A DNA stretch of 64,000 bases, taken from positions 1 through 64,000 of the IMG/VR virus record IMGVR_UViG_3300032782_000001. The stretch is one strand, 5' to 3'. The number at the start of each line of letters is the position of its first letter. The first letter of the stretch is position 1. The notes under the pieces were generated by a model. The model ran no database searches and was not told the origin of the DNA. It saw nothing but the letters and a program-made list of their open reading frames with translations. Positions 121 to 45,016 of the stretch are shown one piece after another. The translations under genes and the position numbers were made by a program.

Positions 121-164
121 CGTCGCCTCCGTCCGCCAATACGACGGACGGAGGCGAATTTCCG
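121..164 (-). promoter_or_regulatory. promoter/RBS cassette with spacer complementary to its RBS
   Basis: CGGAAATTC-N12-CGTAT...GGAGGCGAC; TCGCCTCCGTCCG/CGGACGGAGGCGA inverted repeat. Confidence 0.7.
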
Positions 165-165
165 A

Positions 166-393
166 TCACCCGTCGTCTTGCGCGTCCGCGGTCGCCTCTT
201 CTTCCGTGTCGAAGGGACCGTTCGGCGTCCCGTCAGGCACGCACCCGGGGAAGCAGGCCCACCAGTACCAGCCTGCAGCGAGCTTCTCGCCGTCTTCGGC
301 CTCCAGCTCACCTTCCGGGGCGTAGAAGACCTCGGCGTTCGGCAGAGCCGTCTCTTCGGTCTCACGGCTCTTGTCGGTGTAAATCTGCGGCAT
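166..393 (-). CDS. acidic hypothetical protein
   Basis: ORF track; ATG after GGAGGTGAC cassette. Confidence 0.8.
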   Translation of the reverse strand: MPQIYTDKSRETEETALPNAEVFYAPEGELEAEDGEKLAAGWYWWACFPGCVPDGTPNGPFDTEEEATADAQDDG

Positions 394-395
394 TG

Positions 396-440
396 TCGTC
401 ACCTCCGATCTAGAGTACGACCGGAGGTGACGAACTTACG
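396..440 (-). promoter_or_regulatory. promoter/RBS cassette with anti-SD spacer
   Basis: CGTAAGTTC-GTCACCTCCGGT-CGTAC...GGAGGTGAC. Confidence 0.75.
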
Positions 441-443
441 GCC

Positions 444-704
444 TTACGGCACCTGCCAAGTCCCGTCGCCTTCGTAGTAGAAGACAGACGCGCCGCTCGG
501 CAGCTCGACGAACGGGCAGTAACCGCCGCGGTCTGACCCTTCTGGGTGTTCGTCCACGTAGCCCTTGCACCCTTCCGGCAAGGGTACGTCCTGGTCTTCG
601 ACCCAGCCCTCCCCGCGGGCCACTTCCTTCGTCAAAGTCACCACGCCCTTGTGGACAGACGGGGTGCAGCCTTCGAGGTACTTGAGAAGCTCAGTCCTGT
701 TCAC
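444..704 (-). CDS. hypothetical protein
   Basis: GTG start after cassette at 706-749. Confidence 0.8.
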   Translation of the reverse strand: MNRTELLKYLEGCTPSVHKGVVTLTKEVARGEGWVEDQDVPLPEGCKGYVDEHPEGSDRGGYCPFVELPSGASVFYYEGDGTWQVP

Positions 705-757
705 GTCGTCACCTCCGCACCTGAGTACGCGCGGAGGTGACGAACTTGCCCTTTGTT

Positions 758-1012
758 TTACTTGGACTGGACAACCGTCACTTGGAACTCCGATCCGTCC
801 GTGAGACGGAGGACGAATCCGGCGTTGTTCGTGAGGACCATGGCCTCCTCGAAGGAGCGAAGGTCTGCACCGACCAGCACAGCCCCATCGTCCAAGCCGG
901 ACTCCACCTCGGTCGAAAGACCGATGGTCTCCTGAAGCAGAGTCGCCATTTCCATCTCGTCCATCGTAGCGATGACCTCACCGATCCGGGCCGTGTGTAC
1001 GCTCTTCGCCAT
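758..1012 (-). CDS. hypothetical protein
   Basis: MAKSVHT... after cassette at 1014-1059. Confidence 0.8.
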   Translation of the reverse strand: MAKSVHTARIGEVIATMDEMEMATLLQETIGLSTEVESGLDDGAVLVGADLRSFEEAMVLTNNAGFVLRLTDGSEFQVTVVQSK

Positions 1013-1073
1013 CGTCGTCACCTCCGACTCTGGATACGACGATGGCCGGCGGATTTTCGCTCCGCCGGCCATC

Positions 1074-1427
1074 GAGACTGCACACCCGCGCTTGCCGGTT
1101 CTCCGGCTCTCAGCAAAGTTTGGAGGCGGCCACCAGCCGCCCGCTTTGACCCTTCCTCATCGGCCTCCTCACTTTCTGCGCCAGACCTCCGGTCTGGGAG
1201 AGCGTTGACCTCACCTATCCACGCCGTGCGAGTTGTCTCTTAACTGGGGGCCGGAGAACGGCAGCTTCGATCTCCCACCGCTAGCTGACGATCTTACCCC
1301 ACCCGGCGGCCGCAAGCCGCGCGATATAACGCAATCGGACTGCCTTTCCTTCGTAGGAGGTTGGTTTCTAGGACCTGTATGCCGCCGCGCGGTGGCCGGC
1401 CACCGCGCTCTCCCCGCTTGCGATCTC
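1074..1427 (-). ncRNA. candidate structured ncRNA (~354 nt)
   Basis: own promoter motif at 1430-1455 with no canonical RBS/ORF; 5'/3' closing stem, two interleaved long-range stems, several local hairpins. Confidence 0.6.
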
Positions 1428-1450
1428 CGGTACGCCGCGCGTCGCCGAAC

Positions 1451-1585
1451 TTACGACCGGAGCAACGAGCCGATCGCCTCGCGCGTCTCCAGACAGATCG
1501 CCAGCTGCGCCTCGGTGATCTTGCCCTCGTCGTACCACGCGAGGATCTTCTTCACGCTGCTGAACCGCACGCTCTTCTTCGCCAT
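1451..1585 (-). CDS. small hypothetical protein (44 aa, MAKKSVRFSSVKK...)
   Basis: manual translation; preceded by cassette at 1590-1632. Confidence 0.7.
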   Translation of the reverse strand: MAKKSVRFSSVKKILAWYDEGKITEAQLAICLETREAIGSLLRS

Positions 1586-1644
1586 CGGTCTCACCTCCAC
1601 AACCGAATACGACGCGGATCGCCAGACTTACGACCGCGCCCACA

Positions 1645-1684
1645 ATTCCCCTTTAAAATTGAACTGGGAATTTTAAAGGGGAAT
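1645..1684. repeat. 16-bp AT-rich inverted repeat between divergent promoters
   Basis: ATTCCCCTTTAAAATT-N8-AATTTTAAAGGGGAAT. Confidence 0.8.
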
Positions 1685-1749
1685 CCCTCGCCCAGCGGGC
1701 GCCGCAAATCCGACAGGGCCCGTCGTATCCAGGGACGGAGGTGATGACG

Positions 1750-2115
1750 ATGACGACGAACAACGCAGCGAGCTACCCGTTCCTCAGCAAGGCCCAGATC
1801 AAGGATCGCCTGGCCCAAGACCCGGACTTCGTCCGGGAGTGCGCCCTGATCATGCAGGATCGCCAGACGGCCTACGAGCAGGCCACCCTCACCACGAAGG
1901 ACCGCAACCGCAAGGGCTGGATGAGCAGCCACGCCGTCAACGGCGGCAAGCTCACCGCCAAGCTCCGCCAGGGAGAGGCCCTCGAAGCCGAGGAGTGGCT
2001 CAAGCTCCAGGAGATGGTCTCGCACTACGGCAAGCAGCTCGCGAGCCACTTCCGGGAGGCGGCCATCGAAGCCAACCCGACCCTCAAGGCCGCGGCCGCG
2101 ATCTTCGGCGTCTGA
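1750..2115 (+). CDS. hypothetical phage protein
   Basis: GC3-rich ORF after cassette at 1703-1745. Confidence 0.85.
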   Translation: MTTNNAASYPFLSKAQIKDRLAQDPDFVRECALIMQDRQTAYEQATLTTKDRNRKGWMSSHAVNGGKLTAKLRQGEALEAEEWLKLQEMVSHYGKQLASHFREAAIEANPTLKAAAAIFGV

Positions 2116-2123
2116 TCCAACCA

Positions 2124-2153
2124 GGCCCCGCCCGGGTTCTTCCGGGCGGGGCC
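2124..2153 (+). terminator. GC hairpin, possible terminator
   Basis: GGCCCCGCCCGG-loop-CCGGGCGGGGCC after stop; no U-tract. Confidence 0.5.
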
Positions 2154-2214
2154 TGCCCGTCAAAGCGGCCGCAAATCTGATGCGGCCGCGCGTATTGACA
2201 TTCGGAGGGTAACG

Positions 2215-2463
2215 ATGATCGACACGAGCTGCACGCTCACCGTGGGCGACTTGCTGGAAGCATTGAAGGCCGGTCGCGTGACCCCGGACACCTGCCTGGG
2301 ATACGCCGTTCGAGGGTTCCCGTCCGATGGCGTGGAGTCCATCTCTGCCATCAGCTTCCACAAATACGAGGACGGGACCCGGGTCCTCATCTTCTTGAAC
2401 GACGTTAACTCCCCACAAGTCGCTCGCGACGTCGTACCGCTGGAAGCCGAAGATTTGACCTGA
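2215..2463 (+). CDS. hypothetical protein
   Basis: after cassette at 2170-2210. Confidence 0.75.
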   Translation: MIDTSCTLTVGDLLEALKAGRVTPDTCLGYAVRGFPSDGVESISAISFHKYEDGTRVLIFLNDVNSPQVARDVVPLEAEDLT

Positions 2464-2468
2464 CCCCT

Positions 2469-2501
2469 AAGGCCGGGCTCGCGAAAGCGGGTTCCGGCCT
2501 T
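2469..2501. terminator. hairpin between convergent genes
   Basis: AAGGCCGGGCTCGC-GAAA-GCGGGTTCCGGCCTT. Confidence 0.6.
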
Positions 2502-2509
2502 CGTCGTTC

Positions 2510-2731
2510 TTACTCTGATGGGATGTTAAATCCCTTGGGGTGACCTTCAGGAATATCTGCCAAGATATCTTTTGAAAGATCCCCTTTAAAAGCCAATCCA
2601 ATACACCCCTTTGAACAATAGTCCTTACGGATCGCCTTCAAAGACGAGTCCCCCTCTACTTTAAGGACTAGCCAGTTAGAAGGGATGGACTGCCCGACAA
2701 CCGATTTTCCGCAAGTATTACAAACCCACAT
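2510..2731 (-). CDS. small Cys-rich protein
   Basis: CNTC...YCSKGC. Confidence 0.55.
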   Translation of the reverse strand: MWVCNTCGKSVVGQSIPSNWLVLKVEGDSSLKAIRKDYCSKGCIGLAFKGDLSKDILADIPEGHPKGFNIPSE

Positions 2732-2744
2732 GAAGAACAATACT

Positions 2745-2771
2745 TGGCAGGGGATCGTCGATCCCCTGCCA
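2745..2771. repeat. TGGCA-N17-TGCCA palindrome, copy 1
   Basis: TGGCAGGGGATCGTCGATCCCCTGCCA. Confidence 0.8.
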
Positions 2772-2816
2772 AGTATTTGTTTCAACCAGGGAATTTGCCC
2801 GTGTCGGGCCGAGCTT

Positions 2817-3272
2817 TCAAGATGGGACGACGAAATTTCCGCTTGAAAGAGCTGCCTGAAGGGACTTCATCATCACTTCCGGCGGGACGACACGCACGTC
2901 TCCCTCGACATCCGCGGCCATCCCAACCAGATCTTCCCAAGTGGCCGGAGGCGTCTCACCCTCCTCCAAATCCCACCCGACTTGGTCCCAAACCCCCTCC
3001 ATGTCGTCGTAAAGACCCATGGAGCCCCTGGTCCCACCCCCATGGATTTTCTCGTCAGCCGCTTCCACCGCGGCAGCCATCTCCGGAGTCCCTCCACCCG
3101 GAACTTTGAAAGCCTGCCATCCCCACGGCCCACTAACCGCCACATACGCGTCGCTCATAGCCGCCAGTACGCGGCGCAGCGCCGCACTTACGCGGACGCG
3201 ACTCGGTTTTTGACTGCGGTCAATTTTATCCGCAATTTGGCGCAAAGAAGCAGCAACCCGAGAAGGCGTCAT
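2817..3272 (-). CDS. protein with PSRVAASLRxIADKID leader (paralog of 14874-15284)
   Basis: near-identical 39-aa N-terminus. Confidence 0.85.
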   Translation of the reverse strand: MTPSRVAASLRQIADKIDRSQKPSRVRVSAALRRVLAAMSDAYVAVSGPWGWQAFKVPGGGTPEMAAAVEAADEKIHGGGTRGSMGLYDDMEGVWDQVGWDLEEGETPPATWEDLVGMAADVEGDVRVVPPEVMMKSLQAALSSGNFVVPS

Positions 3273-3363
3273 GCTTCTCTCCGTCAAAGGAGTTTTAGAA
3301 TCACGTCGCCACTTGCGTCAGCGGACCAAATTTTTGCCCCGCTTGCGTACGCGCGCGCAGGTA

Positions 3364-3390
3364 TGGCAGGTATTTCTGCGATCCCTGCCA
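3364..3390. repeat. TGGCA-N17-TGCCA palindrome, copy 2
   Basis: TGGCAGGTATTTCTGCGATCCCTGCCA. Confidence 0.7.
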
Positions 3391-3659
3391 GGGATCGAGC
3401 CGATCCTTCTAGTTAGGTTCGCCTTTTTGGCGTTTCTTTACTGAAGAGCCAAGTCATTCCGAGCACGGTGGTCACCAACCCCACCAAGAAGTAAGGCGGC
3501 GGGTATTCGTAGAGAAGCGCACCCAGCAAAGTAAAGCTGAGTCCGGAGATCACCAGGGCGACGGGAAAAAGGCGAGGCTTCACGAGTAAAAACCGGACCC
3601 TGGAGCCGCATGGTCGCCGGTTGGAGGTGACGACGGTCGGCTCCAGGGTCCCAAGGTGT

Positions 3660-3845
3660 TCAGTCGATGCGCCGCGCCTCCAAGCCCTTCTTCGTCGGAC
3701 GAAGGGTTCCGTCCACCTCGACGATGAAACCCTTCTTGACGAGGGCGAATCGCCGTCGACCGTCGATGGCGTGGGCCGGACACGGCTCCTTCACGTCGTC
3801 GCAATAGACAATTGAGAGCAGGGCCATCCAGGTTTCGAAAGTCAC
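3660..3845 (-). CDS. hypothetical protein
   Basis: SD GGAGG; GTGA overlap with upstream gene. Confidence 0.65.
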   Translation of the reverse strand: MTFETWMALLSIVYCDDVKEPCPAHAIDGRRRFALVKKGFIVEVDGTLRPTKKGLEARRID

Positions 3846-4201: not shown

Positions 4202-4245
4202 TTAATCAAAACCTCCGACCGATCTTACGTTGAAAAGCAGAAGGT

Positions 4246-4473: not shown

Positions 4474-4528
4474 GTTCGTCACCTCCGGATCCAAATACGA
4501 CCGGAGGTGACGAACTTGCGCCGTCGCG

Positions 4529-4999: not shown

Positions 5000-5062
5000 G
5001 TCGTCACCTCCGCGATCGGATACGACGCGGCCCGGCGGATTTCTGCGATCGCGCCGAGTTCT

Positions 5063-5359: not shown

Positions 5360-5437
5360 CCGGCCATCACCTCCTGCCCCCGATACGCCGCGGAACCGCC
5401 AGATTTGCGCCCCGGCTTCAAAGGGGACCTTTAAAGA

Positions 5438-5638: not shown

Positions 5639-5814
5639 AAGCTAAAACGTAAATTCGAACCGGTCAGACGTATCCGGAATCAACAAACATAAATGTACCG
5701 GAAGACGGGATCATTTCAACGAACGTCCGGTATTTCGGGGGGTTTGGAAGTTCCGGGTGATTGGGAGTTGGAGGTCCGGAAGTTCGGGGATTTGGAAGTT
5801 TCGGGAGGTTGGGG

Positions 5815-7956: not shown

Positions 7957-7959
7957 CGT

Positions 7960-8650: not shown

Positions 8651-8698
8651 CGTCGCCTCCAGATCGCAATACGTCTCGACCTTTCGGATTTCCGTCGA

Positions 8699-9291: not shown

Positions 9292-9950
9292 ACCTCCACC
9301 ACTTGATATCCGATCTCGCGCGGTTGCCTTTCCTCGTCCAGATAAGCTGAATTGCAGAACTCCATCTCTTGGATGGTTTGGCGACCGAATCCGCCGTGCA
9401 CGTGTCCACTGAGCACGGCTTTCACTCGATGATCCGACTCGTAGAACAGGAAGTTGTACAGGTGAATGTTCCCCCTTTGCAGATCCAGGATCATGCTGGG
9501 CGGACAGTGGGCGAGCAACACGTCCGCCATTTTCAGCTCATCTTGGATCCAACGGAACTCTTGCCACATGTCTTGTGACCGACGTTCCCAGTTCCACTCC
9601 CCTTGAAGGTACGGGATGAAAGGGATCCCGTAGAACGTTCGGTCTTCCCACGTGATCAACTTCTTCGTCACGTTGACGGCGCGGATCCCGCCGGCTTTCA
9701 ACAGATCCTCGACGCGTTCCGGTTCCAGAAAGTCGTGATTTCCCGCCACGAACAGGAACGGCCGGTCTCCAAGCCATTCCTTCAATTTCTTCATCCTCCT
9801 CCGGAGCCAGTCCTCTTGGAACTTGGGCTCGACGGACCAGTCTCCACGCGTCTCGTTCGGCATGAAATCCCCCGAATGGACGACAGGCGCATCCAAATCC
9901 GGCAAATCCGGGAGCCTCCCATGCGTGTCAGAAACGTGGATGAGTTTCAT
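9288..9950 (-). CDS. calcineurin-like metallophosphoesterase
   Basis: motifs SDTH, HSGD, GNHD, GHVH. Confidence 0.9.
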   Translation of the reverse strand: MKLIHVSDTHGRLPDLPDLDAPVVHSGDFMPNETRGDWSVEPKFQEDWLRRRMKKLKEWLGDRPFLFVAGNHDFLEPERVEDLLKAGGIRAVNVTKKLITWEDRTFYGIPFIPYLQGEWNWERRSQDMWQEFRWIQDELKMADVLLAHCPPSMILDLQRGNIHLYNFLFYESDHRVKAVLSGHVHGGFGRQTIQEMEFCNSAYLDEERQPREIGYQVVEV

Positions 9951-9982
9951 CTCACCAACCAATACGGCTCGACCCGTCGAAT

Positions 9983-10225
9983 TTACGCCGACATCACTTC
10001 CCAGACGAGGAATTCTTCTTCAGTTATCCGGATCCATTTGTCTCCCAGGAACCCTGGTTTAAATCTGAGTGAATACTGATGTAGATTGCAAACAGCTGCG
10101 GCCCGATTCCCCGTAGGGCTCAATAGGAAGAAGTGTCTTGCAGGCCCGTTCGGCATCGACCCTTCTTCGCGTCTCTGCGCTTCGCACATCTCGCATTTTC
10201 GGACGCCACTTGTAAAATCTTCCAT
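9983..10225 (-). CDS. VMES-tag protein
   Basis: ends EEEFLVWEVMSA. Confidence 0.75.
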   Translation of the reverse strand: MEDFTSGVRKCEMCEAQRREEGSMPNGPARHFFLLSPTGNRAAAVCNLHQYSLRFKPGFLGDKWIRITEEEFLVWEVMSA

Positions 10226-10724: not shown

Positions 10725-10792
10725 CGCGTCACCTCCGCGATCGGATACGCCGTGACTCGTTGGATTTACGATCGCGTTGTACGGTTCCCTAA

Positions 10793-11514: not shown

Positions 11515-11592
11515 ACTAGTCCCGGAAACCAGCCAATACGACGACCGGCGAATTTGCGCTATTGCCAAGTATGGCTGAGGACAGTTTACAGG

Positions 11593-12469: not shown

Positions 12470-12520
12470 CGTCGTCACCTCCAGATCAGGATACGACGTG
12501 ATCCGCCGAATTTGCGCTGG

Positions 12521-13229: not shown

Positions 13230-13277
13230 TATCGTCACCTCCAGATCTGAGTACGTCGGCGACCGGCGAATTTACGA

Positions 13278-14325: not shown

Positions 14326-14372
14326 CGTCGTCACCTCCAGGCGAAAATACGCCGGGGGCTGACGGACTTCCG

Positions 14373-14787: not shown

Positions 14788-14873
14788 ATGTCGCCTCCGG
14801 CACCGAATACGACGCGGCCCGGCGGACTTACGACCGGCCGGGCCCTAGACTTTCAAGCGTAATTGCTTTAACG

Positions 14874-15284
14874 TCAGCTTACGCCGAGGAAATCGGCGAC
14901 GGCATCCATTACGATCTGCTGGATCCCTTCGGGATCTTGCGTAATATCGAAACCCGGTTTCCCCTCAATGCTCCCGTTCTTCCAATCCCAACCGCCGACG
15001 TTGCCCGCATCGTCCAGCATCAAAATCATGACGCCAGCAACAGGGTTCCCATCGACCAGTCCTTGAAACTTGGCTGCAGGTTCATTTGGTTTCTTTGTAA
15101 CTTCCGTCATCTCTAGACGGTATCCGCCAGGCTGCATCGGATCGCCGGATTCCGCCTCGCCTTCGTTCATACTCGCGAGTACGACGCGGATCGCCGAACT
15201 TACGCGGACGCGACTCGGATTGGAAGATCGGTCAATTTTATCGGCGATCTCTCGCAAGGAGGCGGCAACCCGAGAAGGTATCAT
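14874..15284 (-). CDS. protein with PSRVAASLRxIADKID leader
   Basis: N-terminus paralogous to 2817-3272. Confidence 0.85.
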   Translation of the reverse strand: MIPSRVAASLREIADKIDRSSNPSRVRVSSAIRVVLASMNEGEAESGDPMQPGGYRLEMTEVTKKPNEPAAKFQGLVDGNPVAGVMILMLDDAGNVGGWDWKNGSIEGKPGFDITQDPEGIQQIVMDAVADFLGVS

Positions 15285-16957: not shown

Positions 16958-17016
16958 TTCGTCACCTCCACGGTTCGATACGCGCGGAGGTGACGAATTT
17001 GCGCCGGCCGATCGAC

Positions 17017-17472: not shown

Positions 17473-17529
17473 AACGCCTCCGACCTCCGATACGGCGCGA
17501 GCCGCCGAACTTGCGCCCGGCGGCTCGTA

Positions 17530-19628: not shown

Positions 19629-20053
19629 GACTCCATGACTCCGCGCACCAGCTTTAGAGCTTTCCTCTTCTGCTTGATGGCTTTATCGTGCTTTTCGAAC
19701 CAATCGGTTCCCTTAATGATGAACCCGATTTCAGAATGCACTGCAGTCCAGAATTTCTCCCAGTCTACATGCCCATCCAACATTTTGTAGATATGGGCTG
19801 TGGCGCGATCTTCCAAGATATCTTCGAGAAACTTGTCTTTAGCCCAGGTTCCTTCCCCTACGAGGGTCAAGAACTCTTGGCCAATCGTGTGGGGGTTCTG
19901 ATTCAGGAACGCGCACGGATCGAGCGAAGGCAGTGTCTTGAGCACGAAATCTTTGGCCCAGAGAGCGAACCACCAGTCGATGAGACTGATGAAGACAGCT
20001 TCCGATCCGGAGATGATTCCCGAATGGATAGACCTCATTATTGCCTCCATCAT
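19625..20053 (-). CDS. VMES-tag protein
   Basis: ends LVRGVMES. Confidence 0.75.
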   Translation of the reverse strand: MMEAIMRSIHSGIISGSEAVFISLIDWWFALWAKDFVLKTLPSLDPCAFLNQNPHTIGQEFLTLVGEGTWAKDKFLEDILEDRATAHIYKMLDGHVDWEKFWTAVHSEIGFIIKGTDWFEKHDKAIKQKRKALKLVRGVMES

Positions 20054-20102
20054 CCAATACGCGCGACCGGACCAAACTTGCCCGGCGACGCCATATTGTC
20101 GC

Positions 20103-20846: not shown

Positions 20847-20888
20847 CGTCGTCACCTCCGCGATTGAATACGACGCCGACTGCTGAAT

Positions 20889-21170
20889 TTACGTCGCGAG
20901 CGCTCCGGCTGCCCAGTGGAGCGTATCTCGAAGCTTTTCGGCTTCCTCCTCGTCTTGCCTATTGTATCCCCACTTGTAAAGCTGACTGTCAATGGCCGCC
21001 GCGAGAGTACCAGCCTTGTCACCTGCTTCATCGAGAAGCTGCTGGAGCCCGGGGCCGGGCGGCAAGACCTCGCGATCCTGAAGCTCCTCCCAAGCCTTTT
21101 GGATGATCTCCTTGAGTTGTCCGTCCGAGAGACTTTCGTAATTGGGTTGACTGGCGTCCATATACTGCAC
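20889..21170 (-). CDS. hypothetical protein
   Basis: after cassette at 21167-21208. Confidence 0.75.
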   Translation of the reverse strand: MQYMDASQPNYESLSDGQLKEIIQKAWEELQDREVLPPGPGLQQLLDEAGDKAGTLAAAIDSQLYKWGYNRQDEEEAEKLRDTLHWAAGALAT

Positions 21171-21203
21171 CTCCGCGATCGAATACGACGCGGATGTGCG
21201 AAT

Positions 21204-21416
21204 TTACGCCGCTGCCGTGTCCAAGGTTGCAGCTTCTTCTTTTAGAAGCGATGCGGCTTTTTCTGCTATGGTGGCAAGTAAAAGCATTTGCTCGGACGAA
21301 ATTCTCTCAAACCCCTGATTCGAAATTTCGTCTATGTCCCGATCAGGTACTAGCTTCAATACATGACCGGCCAAAAGCATGATCCTGACAAGACACACTT
21401 TGGAATCAATGGTCAT
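21204..21416 (-). CDS. hypothetical protein
   Basis: SD GGAGG; ORF track. Confidence 0.6.
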   Translation of the reverse strand: MTIDSKVCLVRIMLLAGHVLKLVPDRDIDEISNQGFERISSEQMLLLATIAEKAASLLKEEAATLDTAAA

Positions 21417-21711: not shown

Positions 21712-22140
21712 ATGAAAGTTTCGCGGTCCGGAACGTACCAGATCCTGGAGGGCGTGCGTATGCGCCAGGAGATGAGAACGAAGCCGTCCGTGGAGGCCGG
21801 CATCAAGTCCGATTCCACGGACGGTCGAGCGCGTGTTGTCGACTACCAGCCGGGCAATGGTACGAGGTATGTCCTCGTTTTGACGAGCCTTTCAGGTCAT
21901 CCGAGCCAAGAGAAAGTTCTGACTCGAGAAGATCAGTGTGCTCTCGTCTGGGTTCAAAATTTCAAGCGTGGATGGATCGCTGGATTCGGCGGTACGAATC
22001 TCGTTCATTATTCTGACATCCAGAAGCATCTAGGTTGCTCCATCATGGATGCCGTCTCTTTGGCGGAAATTATTGGATTCCTTCTCAATCGACCGTGCGT
22101 TTCGGTAGATGATTTTCTCCGCGAAAAGAACGCCGTTTAG
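21712..22140 (+). CDS. hypothetical protein
   Basis: ORF track; start may be 21760 or 21772. Confidence 0.7.
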   Translation: MKVSRSGTYQILEGVRMRQEMRTKPSVEAGIKSDSTDGRARVVDYQPGNGTRYVLVLTSLSGHPSQEKVLTREDQCALVWVQNFKRGWIAGFGGTNLVHYSDIQKHLGCSIMDAVSLAEIIGFLLNRPCVSVDDFLREKNAV

Positions 22141-22844: not shown

Positions 22845-23090
22845 GTGAAAGATCCTGCCACTTGTAACCATTTCTTTGAATGGGAGTTCAACCCTCCTCC
22901 GAGGTCAACTCTCACGCGGAAGGAAATCCGCGACTTGGTTCGTTCGGAAGAGGCTTTGAAAGCCTATTGCGAAAAGGACGCTGCGGAGTTTAAAGCCCGG
23001 GGTCCAGCTGATCCGAAGGAATTCGGTCGGATTCTTTGCAGGTGGTGTCGGAAAGAACGTCAAGACTCCGATTTCCAACGGTTAGCGTAA
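22845..23090 (+). CDS. small Cys-containing protein
   Basis: CNH...CRWC. Confidence 0.6.
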   Translation: MKDPATCNHFFEWEFNPPPRSTLTRKEIRDLVRSEEALKAYCEKDAAEFKARGPADPKEFGRILCRWCRKERQDSDFQRLA

Positions 23091-23131
23091 ATTCGGCACT
23101 CCACCGCGTACTCGCGGTCCGGAGGTGACGA

Positions 23132-24096: not shown

Positions 24097-24174
24097 TCCA
24101 ACAAGTTACAACAGAGCCGCGAGCTCCGCAAATTCGACAGATCGGCACGTATGCAATTGTCAGGAGGTGCCGAC

Positions 24175-25794: not shown

Positions 25795-25845
25795 TCGACT
25801 GTAAAGTGCTCGGCCCCAACTTCAAAAGCAGTGCGGCGCGCAGCC

Positions 25846-25887
25846 GCAAATTCGCCGCTGCTCCGCGTATCGGGCAGTGGAGGTGAC
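25846..25887 (+). promoter_or_regulatory. promoter/RBS cassette
   Basis: CGCAAATTC-N12-CGTAT-N8-GGAGGTGAC. Confidence 0.8.
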
Positions 25888-27379: not shown

Positions 27380-27465
27380 ATGGCAGACATTCAAGCCGTC
27401 AAGGATTGACTTAAATTCTGAGAGTCTCCACGTATGTAGGTTCCAGGCCTTAGGAGGGCCATCTA

Positions 27466-28428: not shown

Positions 28429-28435
28429 GGTATTG

Positions 28436-29833: not shown

Positions 29834-29899
29834 AAGGCAATTTGGCGTCGATCCGCAAATTCAGCGATCCGACGCGTATCGATCTGTGGAGGTGACGAA

Positions 29900-32958: not shown

Positions 32959-33017
32959 GGTTGTAAAGCCGACAGAAATCGCCGGGCTCGGCGCGTATCA
33001 GACAGTGGAGGTGACAC

Positions 33018-33745: not shown

Positions 33746-34012
33746 GCCTCAACTGACTTCCGCGAGGAGGACCGCGAGAACCCTCAACACCGCGAGGTTT
33801 GAGACTTAGAACCGGGTCAAGTCAAGAATACCGAACAACATCTACAGAGCATCGTAGGGGTCCGGTAAGTTGTTACGGCCAGCTAATTGTTGATGGCGGC
33901 CCGGTTAACTTGCATTGTGAAATGCAAGTTCCCTGTGACCTAATAAATAGTCCCAGGCGCCCGGCGTGACGTAAGTCCGCCGGGCTCGCGCGTATTCGGA
34001 TCCGGAGGTGAC

Positions 34013-34318: not shown

Positions 34319-34368
34319 TCGACGTAAATTCAACAGGCTCGTGCGTATTGACACTCGGAGGTGATGCG

Positions 34369-35245: not shown

Positions 35246-35294
35246 CCGGCGTAAATTCGATCGATTGCGACGTATTGGATCGTGGAGGTGACGA

Positions 35295-38945: not shown

Positions 38946-38988
38946 GAGAGCCCGGAAGATTTGGCCTCCGGGCTCTCGGGAAGTGGAA

Positions 38989-39957: not shown

Positions 39958-40055
39958 CGTGTCACCTCCATCGTCCGATACGCCGGGAGGCGCCGAATTT
40001 GCGGCTCGCCTGTCGGCTTCTTCTTCAATGCGAAGGAGGAATTCCTTGAGTTTGC

Positions 40056-40745: not shown

Positions 40746-40892
40746 TCCTTACCCTCCATCCGGTCTATACGCCGGGAGGCGCCGGATTTGCGGCTCGCCT
40801 GTTGGACTCTTCAATTCGAATTCTTTGAATTTCCCCAAAGCGGTGTACGCTGGGATTAGCTCATCTGCGAAAATTTCAAGTCAAAGGCGATC

Positions 40893-41723: not shown

Positions 41724-41788
41724 AGATAATATGACAACACGGCGCAAATTCATCTGATCACGGCGTATCGGCCGGTGGAGGTGACGCC

Positions 41789-42097
41789 ATGATGAATTCC
41801 GAGCAGATGGTGAACACGTTGAAGAACGTCCCTGAGGGAGCGCTCCTCTTCGTCAGTTACATCGCCGGCCGTGAGCCCACCGAGCGCGCCATCCAGGAGG
41901 CGAAGCCTCACACGGAGAACCCTGCGCGCAGTCGACGCCACTTCGTCGGCACCCTTTCGCGCGTCTGGACTGCCCGCAACGGTGACCCCATTCTCACTAT
42001 TCACGCACACAACCGCAACACGGGCGACAAAGCCGGGGGTTACCGGTCTTTCAATCCGAGCCTCGGTCAACTGCTCGCCGTGCAGGTTCTCTCATGA
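41789..42097 (+). CDS. hypothetical protein
   Basis: cassette-led. Confidence 0.8.
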   Translation: MMNSEQMVNTLKNVPEGALLFVSYIAGREPTERAIQEAKPHTENPARSRRHFVGTLSRVWTARNGDPILTIHAHNRNTGDKAGGYRSFNPSLGQLLAVQVLS

Positions 42098-42480: not shown

Positions 42481-42505
42481 TAGGACCCGGCCAGTAGAGT
42501 CCTTC

Positions 42506-42670
42506 ATGGGACTCTGGACGATCTATTGTCATACTGTATGTCGGGTTGACAAAACAAACTTTGGCGAAGAGGTGGAAGAACCACGTCAACGCAGCCAAGT
42601 TGTCCAAAGGACGATGGCATTTCCCGAATGCCATTCGAAAATATGGAGATGTGGCGTTCTCGCATGAAGT
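42506..42670 (+). pseudogene. GIY-YIG homing endonuclease remnant
   Basis: WTIYCHT then, in another frame, YVGLTKQTLAKRWKNH...NAIRKYG. Confidence 0.65.
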
Positions 42671-42852
42671 GCTGCTTCACGCTTTGTCCCCGAGATGCTT
42701 GTCTGGTCTTTCATGACTCAAATCATGAGTGGCCTATGTGCAAAGAGCACGAGGAAGAAGGAGAAAAGGACCTGAAAGCTCAATTTGAGGACAATCCTAT
42801 TCAGGTTATTTCCGGTCCTGAATTTCTTGTTTGGGAAGTCATGGAGTCATGA
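42664..42852 (+). CDS. VMES-tag protein, Zn-module type
   Basis: ends EFLVWEVMES. Confidence 0.8.
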   Translation: MKCCFTLCPRDACLVFHDSNHEWPMCKEHEEEGEKDLKAQFEDNPIQVISGPEFLVWEVMES

Positions 42853-42853
42853 A

Positions 42854-43063
42854 GTGAAATGCGGATTCGGAACCGAGAAGGACCCGGAATTCTCTTGCCC
42901 AAAAGCAGCCACTGTCGGGTTGCAATCTCGAACGCATAGAAATCACATTTTTATTCGTTGCAAAGAGCACTCCCTGGAACTTATCCTTCGGGGATTGTAC
43001 GACGTCATCGACCTGGAAGATGCCGAAAATTTCACTGTCGTCTATGAGATCATGAAGTCCTGA
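42854..43063 (+). CDS. VMES-tag protein, Zn-module type
   Basis: ends VVYEIMKS. Confidence 0.75.
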   Translation: MKCGFGTEKDPEFSCPKAATVGLQSRTHRNHIFIRCKEHSLELILRGLYDVIDLEDAENFTVVYEIMKS

Positions 43064-43139
43064 TCTGTTGTAAATTCTGCAAGGCCCGTCGGATCCGCAA
43101 ATTCGGCGGGCCGCGACGTATCTGGATCTGGAGGTGACT

Positions 43140-44084
43140 GTGCGCGATCTATCGAGGCTCAGGTATTTGCTTAGGTGGGCCCAACTCAATAAGACCTTCG
43201 AAAGGGTCCCGGCCAGTGGAATCCATGTTCCGCTTCGCGACAGTGTGACCCGGTATCAAATCCCAGTGGCCGGGGCCGAATTCCGTCGTGTGAACAATCC
43301 GCACGGGAATCCCGTCGCCAAGCTCCTCGTGGGCTCTCAGGAGATCCAGATCGGAGCCGAGGGATTGGACGACGCCGAGAAGCTGGAAATTGCCCTGGAA
43401 ACTCTCTTCCAGGAGAGGCCGCCAGTGTGGGAATCTCCAGATCTTTCGGACGCCATTCAGCAGGCGTTGTCCCACGCTCGACGAGATGACGTCAAATCCC
43501 GTTTCAATAAGGTCGTCACCGGTCCCATGGACACCGATGAATATACCCATTGGATGAATTTCACCCTTGGTTTGGCTGAGGGGGAGTGTTCGAAAGAATC
43601 TCGAACGGAAATGGTCCTGGGCCATTACATCACCACGACTTATATCTTCAAAGGAACGGAAGCTCAAGCCATTTCCAGCTTGGAAGGACTCCGCGACGTC
43701 AAGCGAATGCCGACTCCGCGTCGTGTGCTCGTCAAAATGGTGCATCTCCGGATGTCGAAGATGCGCAAGGAAGTGGAAGAAGAGAACAATCGTCGGAGGA
43801 AGCAAAGGGCCGAAGACGCATTGCAAGCCAGCCTTCCTCCCAATGATCCGAACAAGCAGAAGAATTACCACCCTAGTGGTAAACCCGACGTCATTATTGG
43901 AGATCTGGATAACCGCGCCAATTGCAAGATGTCAGCATCCAAAGCCAACTATGACGCTGGGTACTGGACCATCCGGCGGGAAGCTGAAAACCTGATGAAA
44001 TGTCTGCAGCGAGAAGACATTGACGATAGCATTATTCACGATGCTTGGAAATTGTATCTCGTCGGCGATGTGATGCAATCATAA
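43140..44084 (+). CDS. VMES-tag protein (314 aa)
   Basis: cassette-led; ends LVGDVMQS. Confidence 0.85.
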   Translation: MRDLSRLRYLLRWAQLNKTFERVPASGIHVPLRDSVTRYQIPVAGAEFRRVNNPHGNPVAKLLVGSQEIQIGAEGLDDAEKLEIALETLFQERPPVWESPDLSDAIQQALSHARRDDVKSRFNKVVTGPMDTDEYTHWMNFTLGLAEGECSKESRTEMVLGHYITTTYIFKGTEAQAISSLEGLRDVKRMPTPRRVLVKMVHLRMSKMRKEVEEENNRRRKQRAEDALQASLPPNDPNKQKNYHPSGKPDVIIGDLDNRANCKMSASKANYDAGYWTIRREAENLMKCLQREDIDDSIIHDAWKLYLVGDVMQS

Positions 44085-44085
44085 C

Positions 44086-44112
44086 TGGCAGGGGTTTACT
44101 AAACCCCTGCCA
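44086..44112. repeat. TGGCA-N17-TGCCA palindrome, copy 5
   Basis: TGGCAGGGGTTTACTAAACCCCTGCCA. Confidence 0.8.
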
Positions 44113-44128
44113 CATATCTGGAGAAATT

Positions 44129-44581
44129 ATGTACGGGAGTGGCTCTTCCAATGAGCAGATGAATACGTTGCTGGCCGAGCGCATCTTCAAGTGGTTGCTC
44201 GACCGTGGTGATTTCATTGAATGGCTGGACCGCCAGCTCATGGACCAAGGATTGGAACTCTTCGCTCAATTGGACTCTCTCACCGCCATGGATGTTGGCC
44301 GAGTCCTTCTCGGCATGCCCGAATGGATTAAAACGAGGTACCGGACCGTTGGAGGTGGTGGCTCCGACGTCCCAACTTTCTTCACGGAGCGCGTGAAGGA
44401 AGAAGTGGCGAAAGATTCCTTCCTCGAGTCATGTGTTGGTAAGTCCGTCCCTGTGACCGCCGCCTGTTTGTCGATGGTCGGTGAGGCTGTCAAACGGACG
44501 AGGTTCTACACGGAGAATGCAACCGAGATGCGACGTCGGATCCGCCATACTAAGGTTGTCCGCCACGTCATGGACTCATGA
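44129..44581 (+). CDS. VMES-tag protein
   Basis: ends VVRHVMDS. Confidence 0.8.
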   Translation: MYGSGSSNEQMNTLLAERIFKWLLDRGDFIEWLDRQLMDQGLELFAQLDSLTAMDVGRVLLGMPEWIKTRYRTVGGGGSDVPTFFTERVKEEVAKDSFLESCVGKSVPVTAACLSMVGEAVKRTRFYTENATEMRRRIRHTKVVRHVMDS

Positions 44582-44919
44582 GCGTACTTTCCCTCGTGAG
44601 CAATCCATTCCAAAGCCTCGACGAGGCCTGTACGCGAGTTCTTGAACACCTATTTCCGGAGAACAACCGGACTGAAATCGTCATGGACTTATCCTATGAT
44701 GAGCAGGAACTCCTCAAGAGTGGCTGGGTCCGAGGTCTCAACGATTGGTGGCGTCATCCTGATGCTCCACTGGATGAGAGCATGAGTCTCTTCTTTGCGA
44801 AGAAGGTGCAAAGGAAGATCGCTCAGTACGACATGCGGAAAGACCAGGAATGGCGGAAAGACTACACGTCCTACCGCATGGCCGTGTCTTCAGTCCACTT
44901 CGACACCTTTACTGACTAA
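44578..44919 (+). CDS. hypothetical protein
   Basis: ATGA overlap. Confidence 0.75.
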   Translation: MSVLSLVSNPFQSLDEACTRVLEHLFPENNRTEIVMDLSYDEQELLKSGWVRGLNDWWRHPDAPLDESMSLFFAKKVQRKIAQYDMRKDQEWRKDYTSYRMAVSSVHFDTFTD

Positions 44920-45016
44920 ACACCCCGCTTTCAAACAGACCGAAAGGCCCCGATAGAGCATGCCGTGGCGGCGTAAATTCCCATCGATCGGCCGTACCGA
45001 TCGGTGGAGGTGACAC

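What the first reader, a model, noticed from the sequence alone, without database searches (positions are those of the whole stretch)
121..45016. About 33 copies of a fixed-geometry promoter/RBS cassette define a regulon
Seen: CG(C/T/G)AA(A/G)T(T/C)C-N12-CGTA(T/C)-N8-GGAGGTGAC-N3-6-start, always oriented with the downstream gene. Approximate positions on -: 160, 435, 745, 1055, 1630, 4515, 5040, 5405, 8690, 9985, 10765, 11555, 12510, 13270, 14370, 14830, 17000, 17510, 20075, 20890, 21205, 40000, 40790. On +: 1703, 2170, 23087, 24128, 25846, 29855, 32973, 33970, 34323, 35250, 41743, 43097, 44972. Established: a -35 AA(A/C) and -10 CGTA layout resembles ECF-sigma promoters such as B. subtilis SigW. 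Inference: an early promoter read by a phage-encoded or host ECF-like sigma or phage RNAP, with the SD at the extreme 5' end of each mRNA.
Basis: partly seen in the sequence, partly recalled or inferred. Interest (0 to 1): 0.65.

Follow-up and report, generated by a model that had tools for sequence, protein, structure and literature searches.

The report
Megaphage promoter cassettes with zero-length leaders
A 436-kb phage from a wetland carries dozens of copies of a two-box promoter that resembles promoters read by alternative (ECF-type) sigma factors, placed so that each mRNA should begin exactly at its ribosome-binding site or at its start codon, and related giant phages keep the same design.

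Summary
The window is the first 64 kb of a circular 436,316-bp IMG/VR phage. A 44-nt matrix finds 48 copies of CGnAAnTyC-N12-CGTAy-N8-GGAGGTGA. All lie in one ~52-kb arc (430.5-436.1 kb plus 0.1-45 kb), and 47 point into an ORF.

New evidence: the two boxes also occur without the SD. An ATG then sits at exactly the offset (N8) where GGAGG starts in the other class. The counts are 5 in this phage, 24 and 7 in two complete relatives. The base before that point is C/T in 133 of 135 sites. Orthologous genes switch between the two forms. I therefore infer a transcription start at the first G of the SD or the A of the ATG.

The box geometry (GnAAAT-N14-CGTA) fits ECF-type promoters. No RNA polymerase gene was detected. 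The clade does encode a conserved, divergent two-domain ECF-like sigma. That gene sits behind a sigma-70-type extended -10 promoter in 12 of 13 orthologous loci, which suggests a cascade.

GC-rich hairpins overlap the boxes, as in T4-type PeSL cassettes.

No RNA data exist, so start sites, timing and the sigma assignment remain inference.

The parts
123..164 (-). SD-class cassette; spacer pairs with SD (type B hairpin); predicted +1 at 130; ORF starts 117 and runs across the record junction
399..440 (-). SD-class cassette, type B hairpin (anti-SD in spacer); +1 at 406; ORF 393-166
709..750 (-). SD-class cassette, type B hairpin; +1 at 716; ORF 704-444
1018..1059 (-). SD-class cassette, type A hairpin (-35 box in loop); +1 at 1025; ORF 1012-758
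1430..1455 (-). Both boxes without SD; predicted +1 at 1421 (G, preceded by C); followed by ~340 nt with no ORF of 40 aa or more on this strand
1591..1632 (-). SD-class cassette, back to back with the + copy at 1703; +1 at 1598; ORF 1585-1451
1703..1744 (+). SD-class cassette; +1 at 1737; ORF 1744/1750-2115; orthologues in G001 and G002 also carry SD-class cassettes
2170..2211 (+). SD-class cassette (SD GGAGGG), type A hairpin; ORF 2215-2463
3156..3192 (-). Leaderless-class copy: boxes, N8, then ATG at 3158; ORF 3158-2817 (113 aa)
4479..4520 (-). SD-class cassette, type B hairpin; ORF 4473-4246
5004..5045 (-). SD-class cassette; ORF 4999-4529
5367..5409 (-). Variant SD cassette with 13-nt spacer; ORF 5359-5063
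5648..5673 (+). Boxes-only copy, predicted +1 near 5682, pointing into the oddly composed 5.7-8.3 kb stretch
8653..8694 (-). SD-class cassette; ORF 8650-8345
9948..9987 (-). Boxes plus 3-nt leader (GAG) and ATG at 9950, in frame with the calcineurin-like phosphoesterase ORF (to 9288)
   Evidence: the frame follows from the ORF coordinates
10729..10770 (-). SD-class cassette; ORF 10724-10443
11536..11558 (-). Decayed copy (9-nt spacer, no SD) just downstream of tRNA-Leu
12475..12516 (-). SD-class cassette; ORF 12469-12095
13235..13276 (-). SD-class cassette; ORF 13229-13020
14331..14372 (-). SD-class cassette, type B hairpin; ORF 14325-14173
14791..14832 (-). SD-class cassette, type A hairpin; ORF 14787-14482
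15168..15204 (-). Leaderless-class copy: ATG at 15170; ORF to 14874 (98 aa), paralogue of the 3158 gene
16962..17003 (-). SD-class cassette, type B hairpin; ORF 16957-16622
17474..17515 (-). SD-class cassette, type A hairpin with GCAA loop; ORF 17472-17017
20041..20082 (-). SD-class cassette (weaker); ORF 20038-19625
20852..20893 (-). SD-class cassette; ORF 20846-20301
21167..21208 (-). SD-class cassette, type B hairpin; ORF 21161-20889
21713..21754 (+). Weak copy (TGAAAGTTT-N12-CGTAC-N8-GGAGG) at the divergence point of the arc; ORF 21760-22140
23086..23127 (+). Variant with SD at N9; ORF 23132-23731
24127..24170 (+). Variant with SD at N10; ORF 24175-24801
25845..25886 (+). SD-class cassette; ORF 25892-27001 (AAA_5 ATPase). 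Orthologues keep the boxes but have longer leaders
27410..27435 (+). Boxes-only copy about 22 nt ahead of the SD and ATG of ORF 27466-28428 (ordinary leader)
29854..29895 (+). SD-class cassette; ORF 29900-31387 (DUF2201 metallopeptidase/VWA); SD class in all three genomes
32973..33014 (+). SD-class cassette; ORF 33018-33374. The G001 orthologue is leaderless-class
33970..34011 (+). SD-class cassette, type A hairpin; ORF 34013/34016-34318
34323..34364 (+). SD-class cassette; ORF 34369-34809
35250..35291 (+). SD-class cassette; ORF 35295-36020
39962..40003 (-). SD-class cassette (best score); ORF 39957-38989 (DUF6011)
40750..40792 (-). Variant with SD at N9; ORF 40745-40056
41743..41784 (+). SD-class cassette; ORF 41789-42097; SD class in all three genomes
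43096..43137 (+). SD-class cassette, type A hairpin; ORF 43140-44084
44972..45013 (+). SD-class cassette, last of the arc; ORF 45017-46285 (ATP-dependent DNA ligase)

Best explanation
The cassette is a compact transcription-and-translation start module of a clade of ~360-440-kb phages.

Shown in the sequence:
- A two-box element, C-G-n-A-A-(A/G)-T-y-C and C-G-T-A-(T/C), separated by exactly 12 bp.
- Exactly 8 bp after it comes either a very strong Shine-Dalgarno sequence (SD class, concentrated in one ORFan-rich arc) or directly an ATG (leaderless class, scattered over the genome).

Inferred:
- The boxes are the -35 and -10 elements of a promoter. CGTAy would occupy -13 to -9 and AA would occupy -31/-30.
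- RNA polymerase starts at the purine 9 nt after the Y, which is the first G of GGAGG or the A of ATG. The mRNAs would therefore have no leader at all, or a leader that begins with the SD.
- The box sequences and the 14-bp gap between GnAAAT and CGTA match the ECF (group 4) sigma promoter class (SigW CGTA, SigV GCAAAC).
- The most likely reader is host core RNA polymerase carrying the phage's own conserved 221-aa ECF-like sigma. That sigma gene sits behind a sigma-70-type extended -10 promoter, which gives a cascade: host sigma A, then phage sigma, then cassette genes.
- The GC-rich spacer often pairs either with sequence upstream of the -35 box or with the SD itself. These hairpins probably end or attenuate transcripts from the upstream gene. 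In the second form they also hide the SD in read-through RNA, so each small gene is translated only from its own transcript.
For: Repeat and clustering.

Orientation and start-codon spacing.

Conservation of boxes and spacings in other records:
- G001: 20 copies.
- G002: 29 copies.
- G003: 13 copies.
- G004: 18 copies.
- G010: 6 copies.
- G011: 10 copies.
- The reversed-pattern control gave 0-1.

Boxes act without the SD: a matrix of the boxes alone gives 70 hits, 59 of them in the arc, against 3-8 in shuffles.

Start-point evidence:
- ATG with an ORF of at least 40 aa sits at offset 8 in 5, 24 and 7 sites in G000, G001 and G002. The background chance is 0.006 per site. Both ATG and GGAG peak sharply at offset 8.
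- GTA[TC]-N8-ATG is about 3-fold enriched genome-wide with no -35 filter: 46, 47 and 42 against about 15 at other offsets.
- The -1 base is C/T in 133 of 135 sites.

Orthologues:
- The RuvA_C-like gene is leaderless-class in G000, G001 and G002, although the G002 orthology rests on a weaker match.
- The ligase-like gene is leaderless-class in G000 and G001. The G002 orthologue has the same layout with CGTAA in place of CGTAy, read by eye.
- Three families switch between SD and leaderless forms.

Divergent back-to-back copies (1632-/1703+, 433786-/433798+) lie where no upstream transcript exists.

Sigma-70-type promoters are not enriched in the arc: 4 found against 6.7 expected.

ECF class from papers: SigW CGTA and TGAAAC, SigV GCAAAC, spacers of 14-17 bp (PMC5758882).

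Phage sigma:
- Pfam region 2 match at E 5e-7 and TIGR02937 at 3.7e-8.
- The model aligns to sigma-E region 2 (Z 7.3, 80 residues, rmsd 3.0) and to region 4 (Z 6.5 and 6.0).
- 58-61% identical in G001 and G002.
- Found in 13 loci, from 12 IMG/VR records.
- TTGnnn-N13-15-TGnTAnnnT lies upstream of it in 12 of 13 loci, against 5 of 619 genes in G000.

Hairpins: 19 type B, 18 type A, 11 none. Of the 18 type B copies whose neighbour could be scored, 17 follow a same-strand gene, whose stop lies a median of 6 nt away. Native spacers fold 4.9 kcal/mol better than shuffled ones.

Strong SDs are specific to the arc: GGAGG precedes 51% of arc genes against 9% elsewhere.
Against: - No transcript data exist. 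The only public runs that hold this DNA are two wetland DNA metagenomes, so no start site, timing or sigma dependence has been observed.
- The -35 box is GnAA(A/G)T rather than the GnAAC typical of ECF promoters.
- The link between the 221-aa sigma and these boxes rests on co-occurrence within one clade, which is not phylogenetically independent, and on the cascade logic.
- The structural matches of the sigma are of middling strength (Foldseek E 0.04 at best; Z about 7).
- Canonical U-tract terminators are not enriched, so the terminator role of the hairpins is by analogy with PeSLs.
- The host is unknown.
Confidence: 0.6

Rival explanations
1. The boxes are promoters, but a host alternative (ECF-type) sigma factor reads them, not a phage sigma. 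The phage would then exploit a host stress regulon at the onset of infection.
For: - The box sequences resemble bacterial ECF promoters such as SigW and SigV.
- A host factor would allow true immediate-early expression of the ORFan-rich arc.
- No autoregulatory cassette precedes the phage sigma gene.
Against: - The same boxes drive 40-90 sites per genome in diverged phages (protein identity 23-62%). These include DNA-metabolism genes outside the arc. That would tie the whole programme to a host stress sigma that is normally held inactive.
- All five complete genomes with the cassette also encode the conserved ECF-like sigma.
- That sigma gene, unlike 99% of genes, has a sigma-70-type promoter.
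Confidence: 0.2
2. The repeats owe their number mainly to spread by recombination, as with PeSL-type mobile regulatory cassettes that shuffle ORFans. The fixed geometry would then be inherited by copying rather than selected at each site.
For: - The architecture matches T4-type PeSLs: promoter, stem-loop at varying positions, SD and ATG, in ORFan-rich plastic regions (PMC2839356 and PMC4122927).
- Small genes of the arc are almost never conserved: 2 of 59 against 25 of 160 elsewhere.
- A few paralogue families exist in the arc.
Against: - Spacer and N8 sequences differ between copies while the lengths stay fixed.
- Orthologous genes at 40-60% protein identity still carry the boxes at the same spacing.
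- The same geometry holds where the SD is replaced by ATG.
- These points indicate selection at each site.
- This rival is compatible with promoter function rather than an alternative to it.
- The one population comparison available showed no breakpoints at cassettes.
Confidence: 0.1
3. The element acts at RNA level. It would be a processing or translation signal in long transcripts, for example a site for an endoribonuclease that cuts 8 nt after CGUAy and creates 5' ends at the SD or AUG.
For: - Many copies sit in hairpins, and the conserved boxes lie in the loops.
- Fixed distances to a cut site would also explain the shared offset of GGAGG and ATG.
Against: - The hairpins are absent in 11 of 48 copies, and they shift between the two boxes, so there is no common RNA structure.
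- Two short boxes at a rigid 12-bp distance with a free spacer sequence are typical of sigma recognition of duplex DNA.
- Back-to-back divergent copies lie where no upstream transcript can exist.
- No other recurrent promoter candidate exists in the arc.
Confidence: 0.06
4. The boxes are read by an unrecognised phage-encoded RNA polymerase, possibly one packaged in the virion.
For: - Giant phages such as phiKZ and AR9 use very divergent polymerases that Pfam models miss.
- The T7-type search had no positive control.
Against: - No match to the beta or beta' core domains, although all 14 control genomes matched.
- The phage invests in at least three sigma-family proteins, which only make sense with the host core enzyme.
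- A two-box layout at -35 and -10 is sigma-like.
Confidence: 0.05

Closest known systems
PeSL (promoter-early stem-loop) cassettes of T4-type phages (Arbiol et al. 2010, PMC2839356; Comeau et al. 2014, PMC4122927)
   Same: - Short composite intergenic modules, repeated many times in ORFan-rich plastic regions.
- Each has a -35 and a -10 box, a GC-rich stem-loop whose position varies relative to the boxes (between them or overlapping either one), and then the SD and start codon of the next gene.
- Each small gene is its own insulated unit.
   Different: - PeSL promoters are strong sigma-70-type early promoters. Here the -10 box is CGTAy, with no TAnnnT.
- PeSLs have no reported fixed distance from the -10 box to the SD, and no leaderless sister class.
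- Recombination and mini-circles are shown for PeSLs and were not tested here.
- The phages are unrelated to T4 as far as tested.
ECF (group 4) sigma promoters, e.g. B. subtilis SigW (TGAAAC-N16-CGTA) and SigV (GCAAAC) (PMC5758882)
   Same: - CGTA as the -10 core.
- An AA-centred -35 box of the form GnAAA.
- Rigid spacing within the 14-17 bp range reported for ECF sigmas.
- No T at -7.
- The inferred start 9 nt after the A of CGTA fits the ECF geometry, which I recall from memory and did not check here.
   Different: - The -35 box ends in T one position later, instead of C (GnAA(A/G)T against GnAAC).
- The spacer is at the short end of the range.
- About 50 to 80 sites sit in a phage genome rather than in a bacterial stress regulon.
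- The cognate sigma is unproven.
Phage-encoded sigma cascade of phiEco32 and 7-11 (promoter consensus tAATGTAtA; PMC4331800)
   Same: - Host sigma-70 promoters serve a few early genes.
- A divergent phage sigma then redirects host polymerase to many phage promoters whose core contains TGTAT, close to the (C/T)GTAT box here.
   Different: - phiEco32 promoters are described as a single 9-bp element. These have a second upstream box.
- The phage sigma here has no detectable sequence match in the phage collection searched, apart from one uncultured 485-kb phage.
- The fixed zero-leader geometry is not part of that system as I read it.
Leaderless mRNAs of Actinobacteria, Deinococcus-Thermus and archaea (Zheng et al. 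2011, PMC3160421); phage lambda cI from PRM (from memory)
   Same: A -10-type signal at a fixed short distance upstream of the start codon, taken as the signature of mRNAs that begin at the AUG.
   Different: - Here the same promoter serves a second class in which the SD, not the AUG, sits at +1.
- The -10 box is not TAnnnT.
- phiKZ early mRNAs, the best mapped giant-phage case, have 31-40-nt leaders and no leaderless transcripts (PMC8244752).

Membership tests
ECF-type (group 4 sigma) promoter | -10 element with CGT core (CGTA or CGTC) | tested here: met
   The CGTA columns carry 1.8 of 2 bits each across the 48 copies. (C/T)GTA(T/C) is kept in relatives. The class is defined in PMC5758882.
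ECF-type (group 4 sigma) promoter | -35 element of the GnAAC type | tested here: inconclusive
   G-n-A-A-(A/G)-T: the G and the AA are strongly conserved (1.5-1.8 bits). The C of AAC is replaced by a T one position later.
ECF-type (group 4 sigma) promoter | Rigid spacer of 14-17 bp between the boxes | tested here: met
   There are 14 bp between GnAAAT and CGTA in all 48 matrix copies. One variant outside the matrix set has one extra base. The range comes from PMC5758882.
ECF-type (group 4 sigma) promoter | Initiation depends on an ECF sigma, at a start site a few nt downstream of the -10 box | not testable with these tools
   No RNA run holds this DNA. The start site is inferred only from the leaderless class and the Y(-1)R(+1) pattern.
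PeSL (T4-type promoter-early stem-loop cassette) | Strong sigma-70-like early promoter | tested here: not met
   The -10 box is CGTAy and the columns after it carry little information. The sigma-70 consensus scan found 4 sites against 6.7 expected.
PeSL (T4-type promoter-early stem-loop cassette) | Stable stem-loop at variable position relative to the boxes, followed by SD and start codon | tested here: met
   37 of 48 copies have the spacer paired either upstream (18) or with the SD (19). The SD and start codon follow.
PeSL (T4-type promoter-early stem-loop cassette) | Concentrated in ORFan-rich plastic regions | tested here: met
   Arc genes under 100 aa with a homologue in G001 or G002: 2 of 59, against 25 of 160 elsewhere.
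PeSL (T4-type promoter-early stem-loop cassette) | Mediates recombination between copies (indels, mini-circles) | tested here: inconclusive
   The contigs of a related strain were too fragmentary. The one deletion seen (961-1008) lies inside a gene, not at a cassette.
Leaderless mRNA genes | Promoter -10 signal at a fixed short distance from the start codon | tested here: met
   ATG lies at exactly N8 after CGTAy in 5, 24 and 7 sites, and there is a sharp peak in the offset histogram.
Leaderless mRNA genes | Primary 5' end at the A of AUG | not testable with these tools
   No transcript data.
phiEco32-type phage sigma system | Phage sigma homologous to the phiEco32 sigma; promoters with the single element tAATGTAtA | tested here: not met
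   tblastn of the 221-aa sigma against 50,697 phage records hit only one uncultured 485-kb phage. I assumed, without checking, that phiEco32 is in that collection. The promoters here have two boxes and share only (T)GTAT with that consensus.
Sigma-70 family, ECF-like two-domain sigma (the 221-aa phage protein) | Region 2 and region 4 domains without regions 1.1 and 3 | tested here: met
   Pfam Sigma70_r2 at 29.8 bits, above its cut-off of 24. TIGR02937 at 33.2 bits, below its cut-off of 42.9. The model aligns to sigma-E region 2 (Z 7.3) and to region 4 of several sigmas (Z 5.6-6.5). Nearly all listed matches are sigma factors. The matches are of middling strength.

The most novel reading that the evidence does not exclude
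A clade of ~400-kb phages runs much of its gene expression through its own ECF-type sigma. The promoters are built so that every transcript starts at the first base of its ribosome-binding site or of its start codon. This would be a programmed 'zero-leader' transcriptome with two interchangeable forms. In the SD-first form the ribosome would sit on the very 5' end of the mRNA. That could protect it from 5'-end-dependent RNases, or from host defences that act on leaders. Meanwhile the anti-SD hairpins silence read-through copies.
Probability: 0.35. Interest if true: 0.75.

Novelty: new variant of a known kind. Interest (0 to 1): 0.6.

Why it matters
Almost nothing is known about how uncultured megaphages time their genes.

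- This gives a concrete, testable promoter model for a whole clade. It includes predicted start sites at single-base resolution, a candidate sigma, and a candidate cascade in which rare sigma-70-type promoters sit in front of the regulators.
- If mRNAs really begin with the SD, that is an unusual translation-initiation substrate. It would be worth testing for ribosome loading and mRNA stability.
- The interchange of SD-first and leaderless forms on orthologous genes would be a natural experiment on how the two initiation modes evolve into each other.
- The compact 42-nt module (insulating hairpin, promoter and SD) could serve as an orthogonal expression part together with its sigma.

Tried and rejected
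- **Rfam:** only the tRNA was found in the window, and nothing for the noncoding stretch at 1080-1421. Its fold is no better than shuffles (z -0.76). It has no nhmmer match in relatives. I therefore dropped the idea of a conserved structured RNA.
- **Megablast against phage records:** 20 kb of the window gave no match.
- **Strict cassette pattern in IMG/VR:** it found too little because the GTGAC tail is genome-specific. A looser pattern worked.
- **RNA evidence:** none. The only holders are two DNA metagenomes. Laying their contigs on bases 1-6000 showed only a related strain in fragments, and cross-matches between cassettes.
- **Host identification:**
  - Both scans of bacterial genomes, with the RpoD-like sigma and with the ECF-like sigma, found no relative.
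  - The host stays unknown. The TRTG-like bases before some extended -10 boxes, the very strong SDs and the SigW-like boxes hint at a Gram-positive host, but that is speculation.
- **Direct and profile sequence searches of the 221-aa sigma against PDB:** nothing useful. Only fold comparison placed it.
- **First regex for the sigma-70 pattern:** it had the wrong spacing and gave 0 of 13. I corrected it.
- **An archaeal BRE/TATA reading of the upstream box:** considered and rejected, because the genome encodes sigma factors and a tmRNA.
- **A sigma-A reading of the -10 box:** rejected for lack of a conserved T at -7, and because canonical sigma-70-type promoters exist elsewhere in the same genomes.
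- **Genetic code:** only code 11 was used.

Full report
**What the window is**

The 64-kb window is the first part of a 436,316-bp IMG/VR virus record.
- It has an exact 127-bp terminal repeat, which means a circular assembly.
- It carries 48 tRNA genes and a tmRNA.
- GC is 50% overall. It rises to 52-63% between 430 kb and 45 kb.
- The source is a wetland metagenome, and no RNA run holds the sequence.

**Check of the observation**

GGAGGTGAC occurs 30 times in the window against 0.64 expected. The strict pattern has 30 matches in the genome.

An iterated 44-nt weight matrix has 48 matches. All lie between 430,484 and 436,116 or between 166 and 44,970. That is one arc of about 52 kb across the record junction, and there are none in the remaining ~385 kb.

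The informative columns are C-G-n-A-A-(A/G)-T-y-C, C-G-T-A-(T/C), the last base of the N8 stretch (C or T), and GGAGGTGA. The 12-nt and 8-nt spacers carry little information but never change length among the 48 copies.

47 of 48 copies are followed by a start codon and an ORF on the same strand. Two of the shortest SD-to-start spacings are mis-assigned starts, because an ATG lies inside GGAGGTGATG. The gene caller puts those genes at 1750 and 34369.

One of these, 23087+, has the SD one base late. The other five are length variants or decayed copies.

**The arc**

A home-made gene caller gives about 115 genes in the arc. About half have their own cassette.
- Few have a Pfam match. Those that do are an AAA_5 ATPase, a DUF2201 metallopeptidase/VWA protein, DUF6011, a calcineurin-like phosphoesterase, an HTH protein and an ATP-dependent DNA ligase.
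- Small arc genes are almost never conserved in two complete relatives (2 of 59, against 25 of 160 elsewhere). Larger ones are conserved less often than elsewhere (24 of 56 against 208 of 346).
- Those that are conserved map into the cassette-bearing arcs of the relatives, so the arcs are homologous regions.
- GGAGG precedes 51% of arc genes and 9% of other genes. GGAGGTGA precedes 27% and 0%.

**Relatives**

Pattern scans of IMG/VR and per-record counts show clustered copies in other large phage records. The reversed-pattern control gave 0-1.

| Record | Size and completeness | Copies |
|---|---|---|
| G001 | 427 kb, complete | 20 |
| G002 | 393 kb, complete | 29 |
| G003 | 202-kb fragment | 13 |
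| G004 | 183-kb fragment | 18 |
| G008 | 193-kb fragment | 4 at N8; 11 at N7 by a looser pattern |
| G010 | 377 kb, complete | 6 |
| G011 | 363 kb, complete | 10 |

The upstream box, the CGTAy box, GGAGG and both spacings are shared. The bases after GGAGG are not.

**The key result: a second class with no SD**

A matrix of the two boxes alone, with the spacer neutralised, finds 70 sites. 59 of them are in the arc, against 3-8 in shuffled genomes.

Among the sites without an SD, an ATG that opens an ORF of at least 40 aa lies at exactly the offset where GGAGG starts in the SD class.
- The counts are 5 sites in this genome, 24 in G001 and 7 in G002.
- The chance of such an ATG at a fixed position is 0.006.
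- Histograms of ATG and of GGAG positions after CGTAy both peak sharply at offset 8.
- Without any -35 filter, GTA(T/C)-N8-ATG-ORF is about three times as frequent as at neighbouring offsets in all three genomes (46, 47 and 42 against about 15).
- 25 of the 46 sites in this genome coincide with starts picked independently by the gene caller.
- The base before the shared point is C or T in 133 of 135 sites, and the point itself is G or A.

Orthologous genes keep the boxes across 40-60% protein identity, while the downstream half changes.
- The RuvA_C-like gene is leaderless-class in all three genomes, although the G002 orthology rests on a weaker match.
- The ligase-like gene is leaderless-class in G000 and G001. 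The G002 orthologue shows the same layout with CGTAA in place of CGTAy.
- The family of window gene 33018 is SD-class here and in G002, but leaderless-class in G001.
- Two more G001 leaderless genes have SD-class orthologues in G002.
- The AAA_5 gene has the boxes followed by a longer leader in G001 and G002.

A signal whose distance is fixed to either the SD or the start codon, but not to both, is most simply a signal for the 5' end of the RNA. I therefore infer a promoter with these positions:
- +1 is the first G of GGAGG or the A of ATG.
- CGTAy lies at -13 to -9.
- The AA of the upstream box lies at -31/-30.

This is inference. No start site has been observed.

**Which polymerase and sigma**

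- Sigma-70 consensus promoters are not enriched in the arc (4 against 6.7 expected). The -10 box lacks the T at -7.
- CGTA is the SigW -10 core and GCAAAC is the SigV -35 element. ECF spacers range from 14 to 17 bp (PMC5758882). Here GnAAAT-N14-CGTA fits that class, except for the last base of the -35 box.
- No beta or beta' homologue is detectable, although all 14 control genomes matched. The T7-type search found nothing but had no positive control.
- The genome encodes a RpoD-like sigma, a 221-aa protein with sigma region 2, and a 321-aa protein with two region 4 copies.
- Weaker region 4 matches lie in a 511-aa KOW protein and in a 541-aa protein. The 511-aa gene itself follows a weak leaderless-class copy.

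The 221-aa protein:
- An AlphaFold model (pLDDT 64.5) shows two helical domains. They align to sigma-E region 2 (Z 7.3, 80 residues, rmsd 3.0) and to region 4 of several sigmas (Z 5.6-6.5). The match list is almost entirely sigma factors, with ECF sigmas at the top.
- It is 58-61% identical in G001 and G002.
- It is found in 13 loci, from 12 IMG/VR records.
- It was absent from both bacterial-genome scans.
- It has only one distant match among 50,697 phage records.
- All five complete genomes that carry it also carry the cassette arcs. They are one clade, so this is weak evidence.

A sigma-70-type extended -10 promoter (TTGnnn-N13-15-TGnTAnnnT) lies within 260 nt upstream of this gene in 12 of 13 orthologous loci. 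In this genome only 5 of 619 genes have such a site. Three of those five are the sigma-like genes: the 221-aa sigma, the two-region-4 protein and the 541-aa protein.

This suggests a cascade in which host sigma A reads the phage regulators and the phage ECF-like sigma then reads the cassette promoters. The precedent is phiEco32 and 7-11, whose phage sigma reads tAATGTAtA (PMC4331800). The assignment is a hypothesis. A host ECF sigma or another phage factor cannot be excluded.

**Hairpins**

In 37 of 48 copies the GC-rich spacer is paired in the minimum-energy fold.
- **Type A (18 copies):** it pairs with sequence upstream, so the -35 box lies in the loop. The loop is often C-GNAA-G.
- **Type B (19 copies):** it pairs with the SD, so the spacer is an anti-SD and the CGTAy box lies in the loop.
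- Of the 18 type B copies whose neighbour could be scored, 17 follow a same-strand gene, whose stop codon lies a median of 6 nt before the cassette. Type A occurs where there is more room (median 51 nt).
- Native spacers fold 4.9 kcal/mol better on average than shuffled ones.
- There are no U tracts, and canonical terminators are not enriched.

By analogy with PeSLs, I read the hairpins as attenuators or 3'-end stabilisers for the upstream gene. In type B a read-through RNA would have its SD sequestered, whereas an RNA started at the cassette begins after the anti-SD. This step is inferred.

**Comparison with what is known**

- The architecture is closest to T4-type PeSLs. The boxes are not sigma-70-like, so it is not a member of that family.
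- The boxes are closest to ECF promoters.
- The cascade is closest to phiEco32.
- The leaderless class is read as in the comparative study of leaderless genes (PMC3160421).
- phiKZ, the best mapped giant phage, has 31-40-nt leaders and no leaderless transcripts.
- In four literature searches I found no description of a promoter family that places either the SD or the AUG at +1. That is not proof that none exists.

**Verdict**

- The repeat is real, conserved and very probably a promoter.
- The start point is well supported by comparison but unmeasured.
- The sigma assignment is plausible.
- I call it a new variant of known kinds, of moderate to good interest.

Noticed in passing
window 1080-1421 (-): A copy of the two boxes without an SD is followed by about 340 nt of GC-rich sequence with no ORF of 40 aa or more on that strand. 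It has no Rfam match, its fold is no better than shuffles (z -0.76), and it has no nhmmer match in relatives. A similar SD-less copy in G001 (226,530+) also precedes noncoding-looking sequence.
   Followed up: partly
window 5700-8300: This stretch has odd composition (GC skew +0.10, AT skew -0.27) and poor, conflicting gene calls. A 294-aa ORF on the minus strand has no Pfam match. A boxes-only copy at 5648-5673(+) points into the stretch.
   Followed up: no
window 11591-11667 (-); G000 431,363-431,436 (-): Two lone tRNA genes, Leu(UAA) and Lys(UUU), sit inside the cassette arc, far from the main tRNA array at 97-115 kb. The first is followed by a decayed cassette.
   Followed up: no
window 2739-2777; G000 about 434,985-435,017: Long, near-perfect GC-rich palindromes sharing the core GGCAGGG(G)ATC...GATC(C)CCTGCC flank two paralogous genes (2817-3158- and 435,042-435,368+). 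One lies downstream of its gene and the other upstream.
   Followed up: no
window 25892-31387 (+): A MoxR-like AAA_5 ATPase and a DUF2201 metallopeptidase/VWA protein lie about 2.9 kb apart, with two proteins of about 310-320 aa between them. One of the two has a C-terminal HTH. Both the ATPase and the VWA protein are well conserved in G001 and G002 (50-60% identity).
   Followed up: partly
window 46000-64000 (+): Past the last cassette lies a long same-strand run of small genes with frequent 4-nt overlaps. It has lower GC (about 48%), few strong SDs and no cassettes. Its expression signals were not identified, apart from possible leaderless copies near 52,419 and 61,908.
   Followed up: partly
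G000 139,122-139,296 and 141,433-141,807: ARAGORN calls two adjacent tRNAs with anticodon UCA ('SeC') and a tmRNA with tag ANDNGALRIAA. The UCA tRNAs could be opal suppressors. Coding density under code 11 is 89%, so I did not pursue recoding.
   Followed up: no
G000 369,397-370,362 (-), 398,549-400,174 (-), 426,920-428,455 (-): There are three more proteins with sigma region-4-like domains.
- One has two region 4 copies and is 69-77% identical in five relatives.
- One is 541 aa long.
- One is 511 aa long and also has a KOW motif.

The first two have rare sigma-70-type extended -10 promoters upstream. The third follows a weak leaderless-class copy and is followed by a ResIII/DEAD helicase gene.
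   Followed up: partly
G000 97,297 (+), 72,924 (-), 136,062 (+), 141,069 (-), 311,880 (+): Only six near-consensus sigma-70 promoters were found in 436 kb. One sits just ahead of the tRNA array, and one precedes the ECF-like sigma gene (176,486-).
   Followed up: partly
G008 (L088, L089), 128-160 kb: In this related fragment the SD mostly lies 7 nt, not 8 nt, after the CGTAy box (11 copies against 4). This looks like a lineage-specific one-base shift of the geometry.
   Followed up: no
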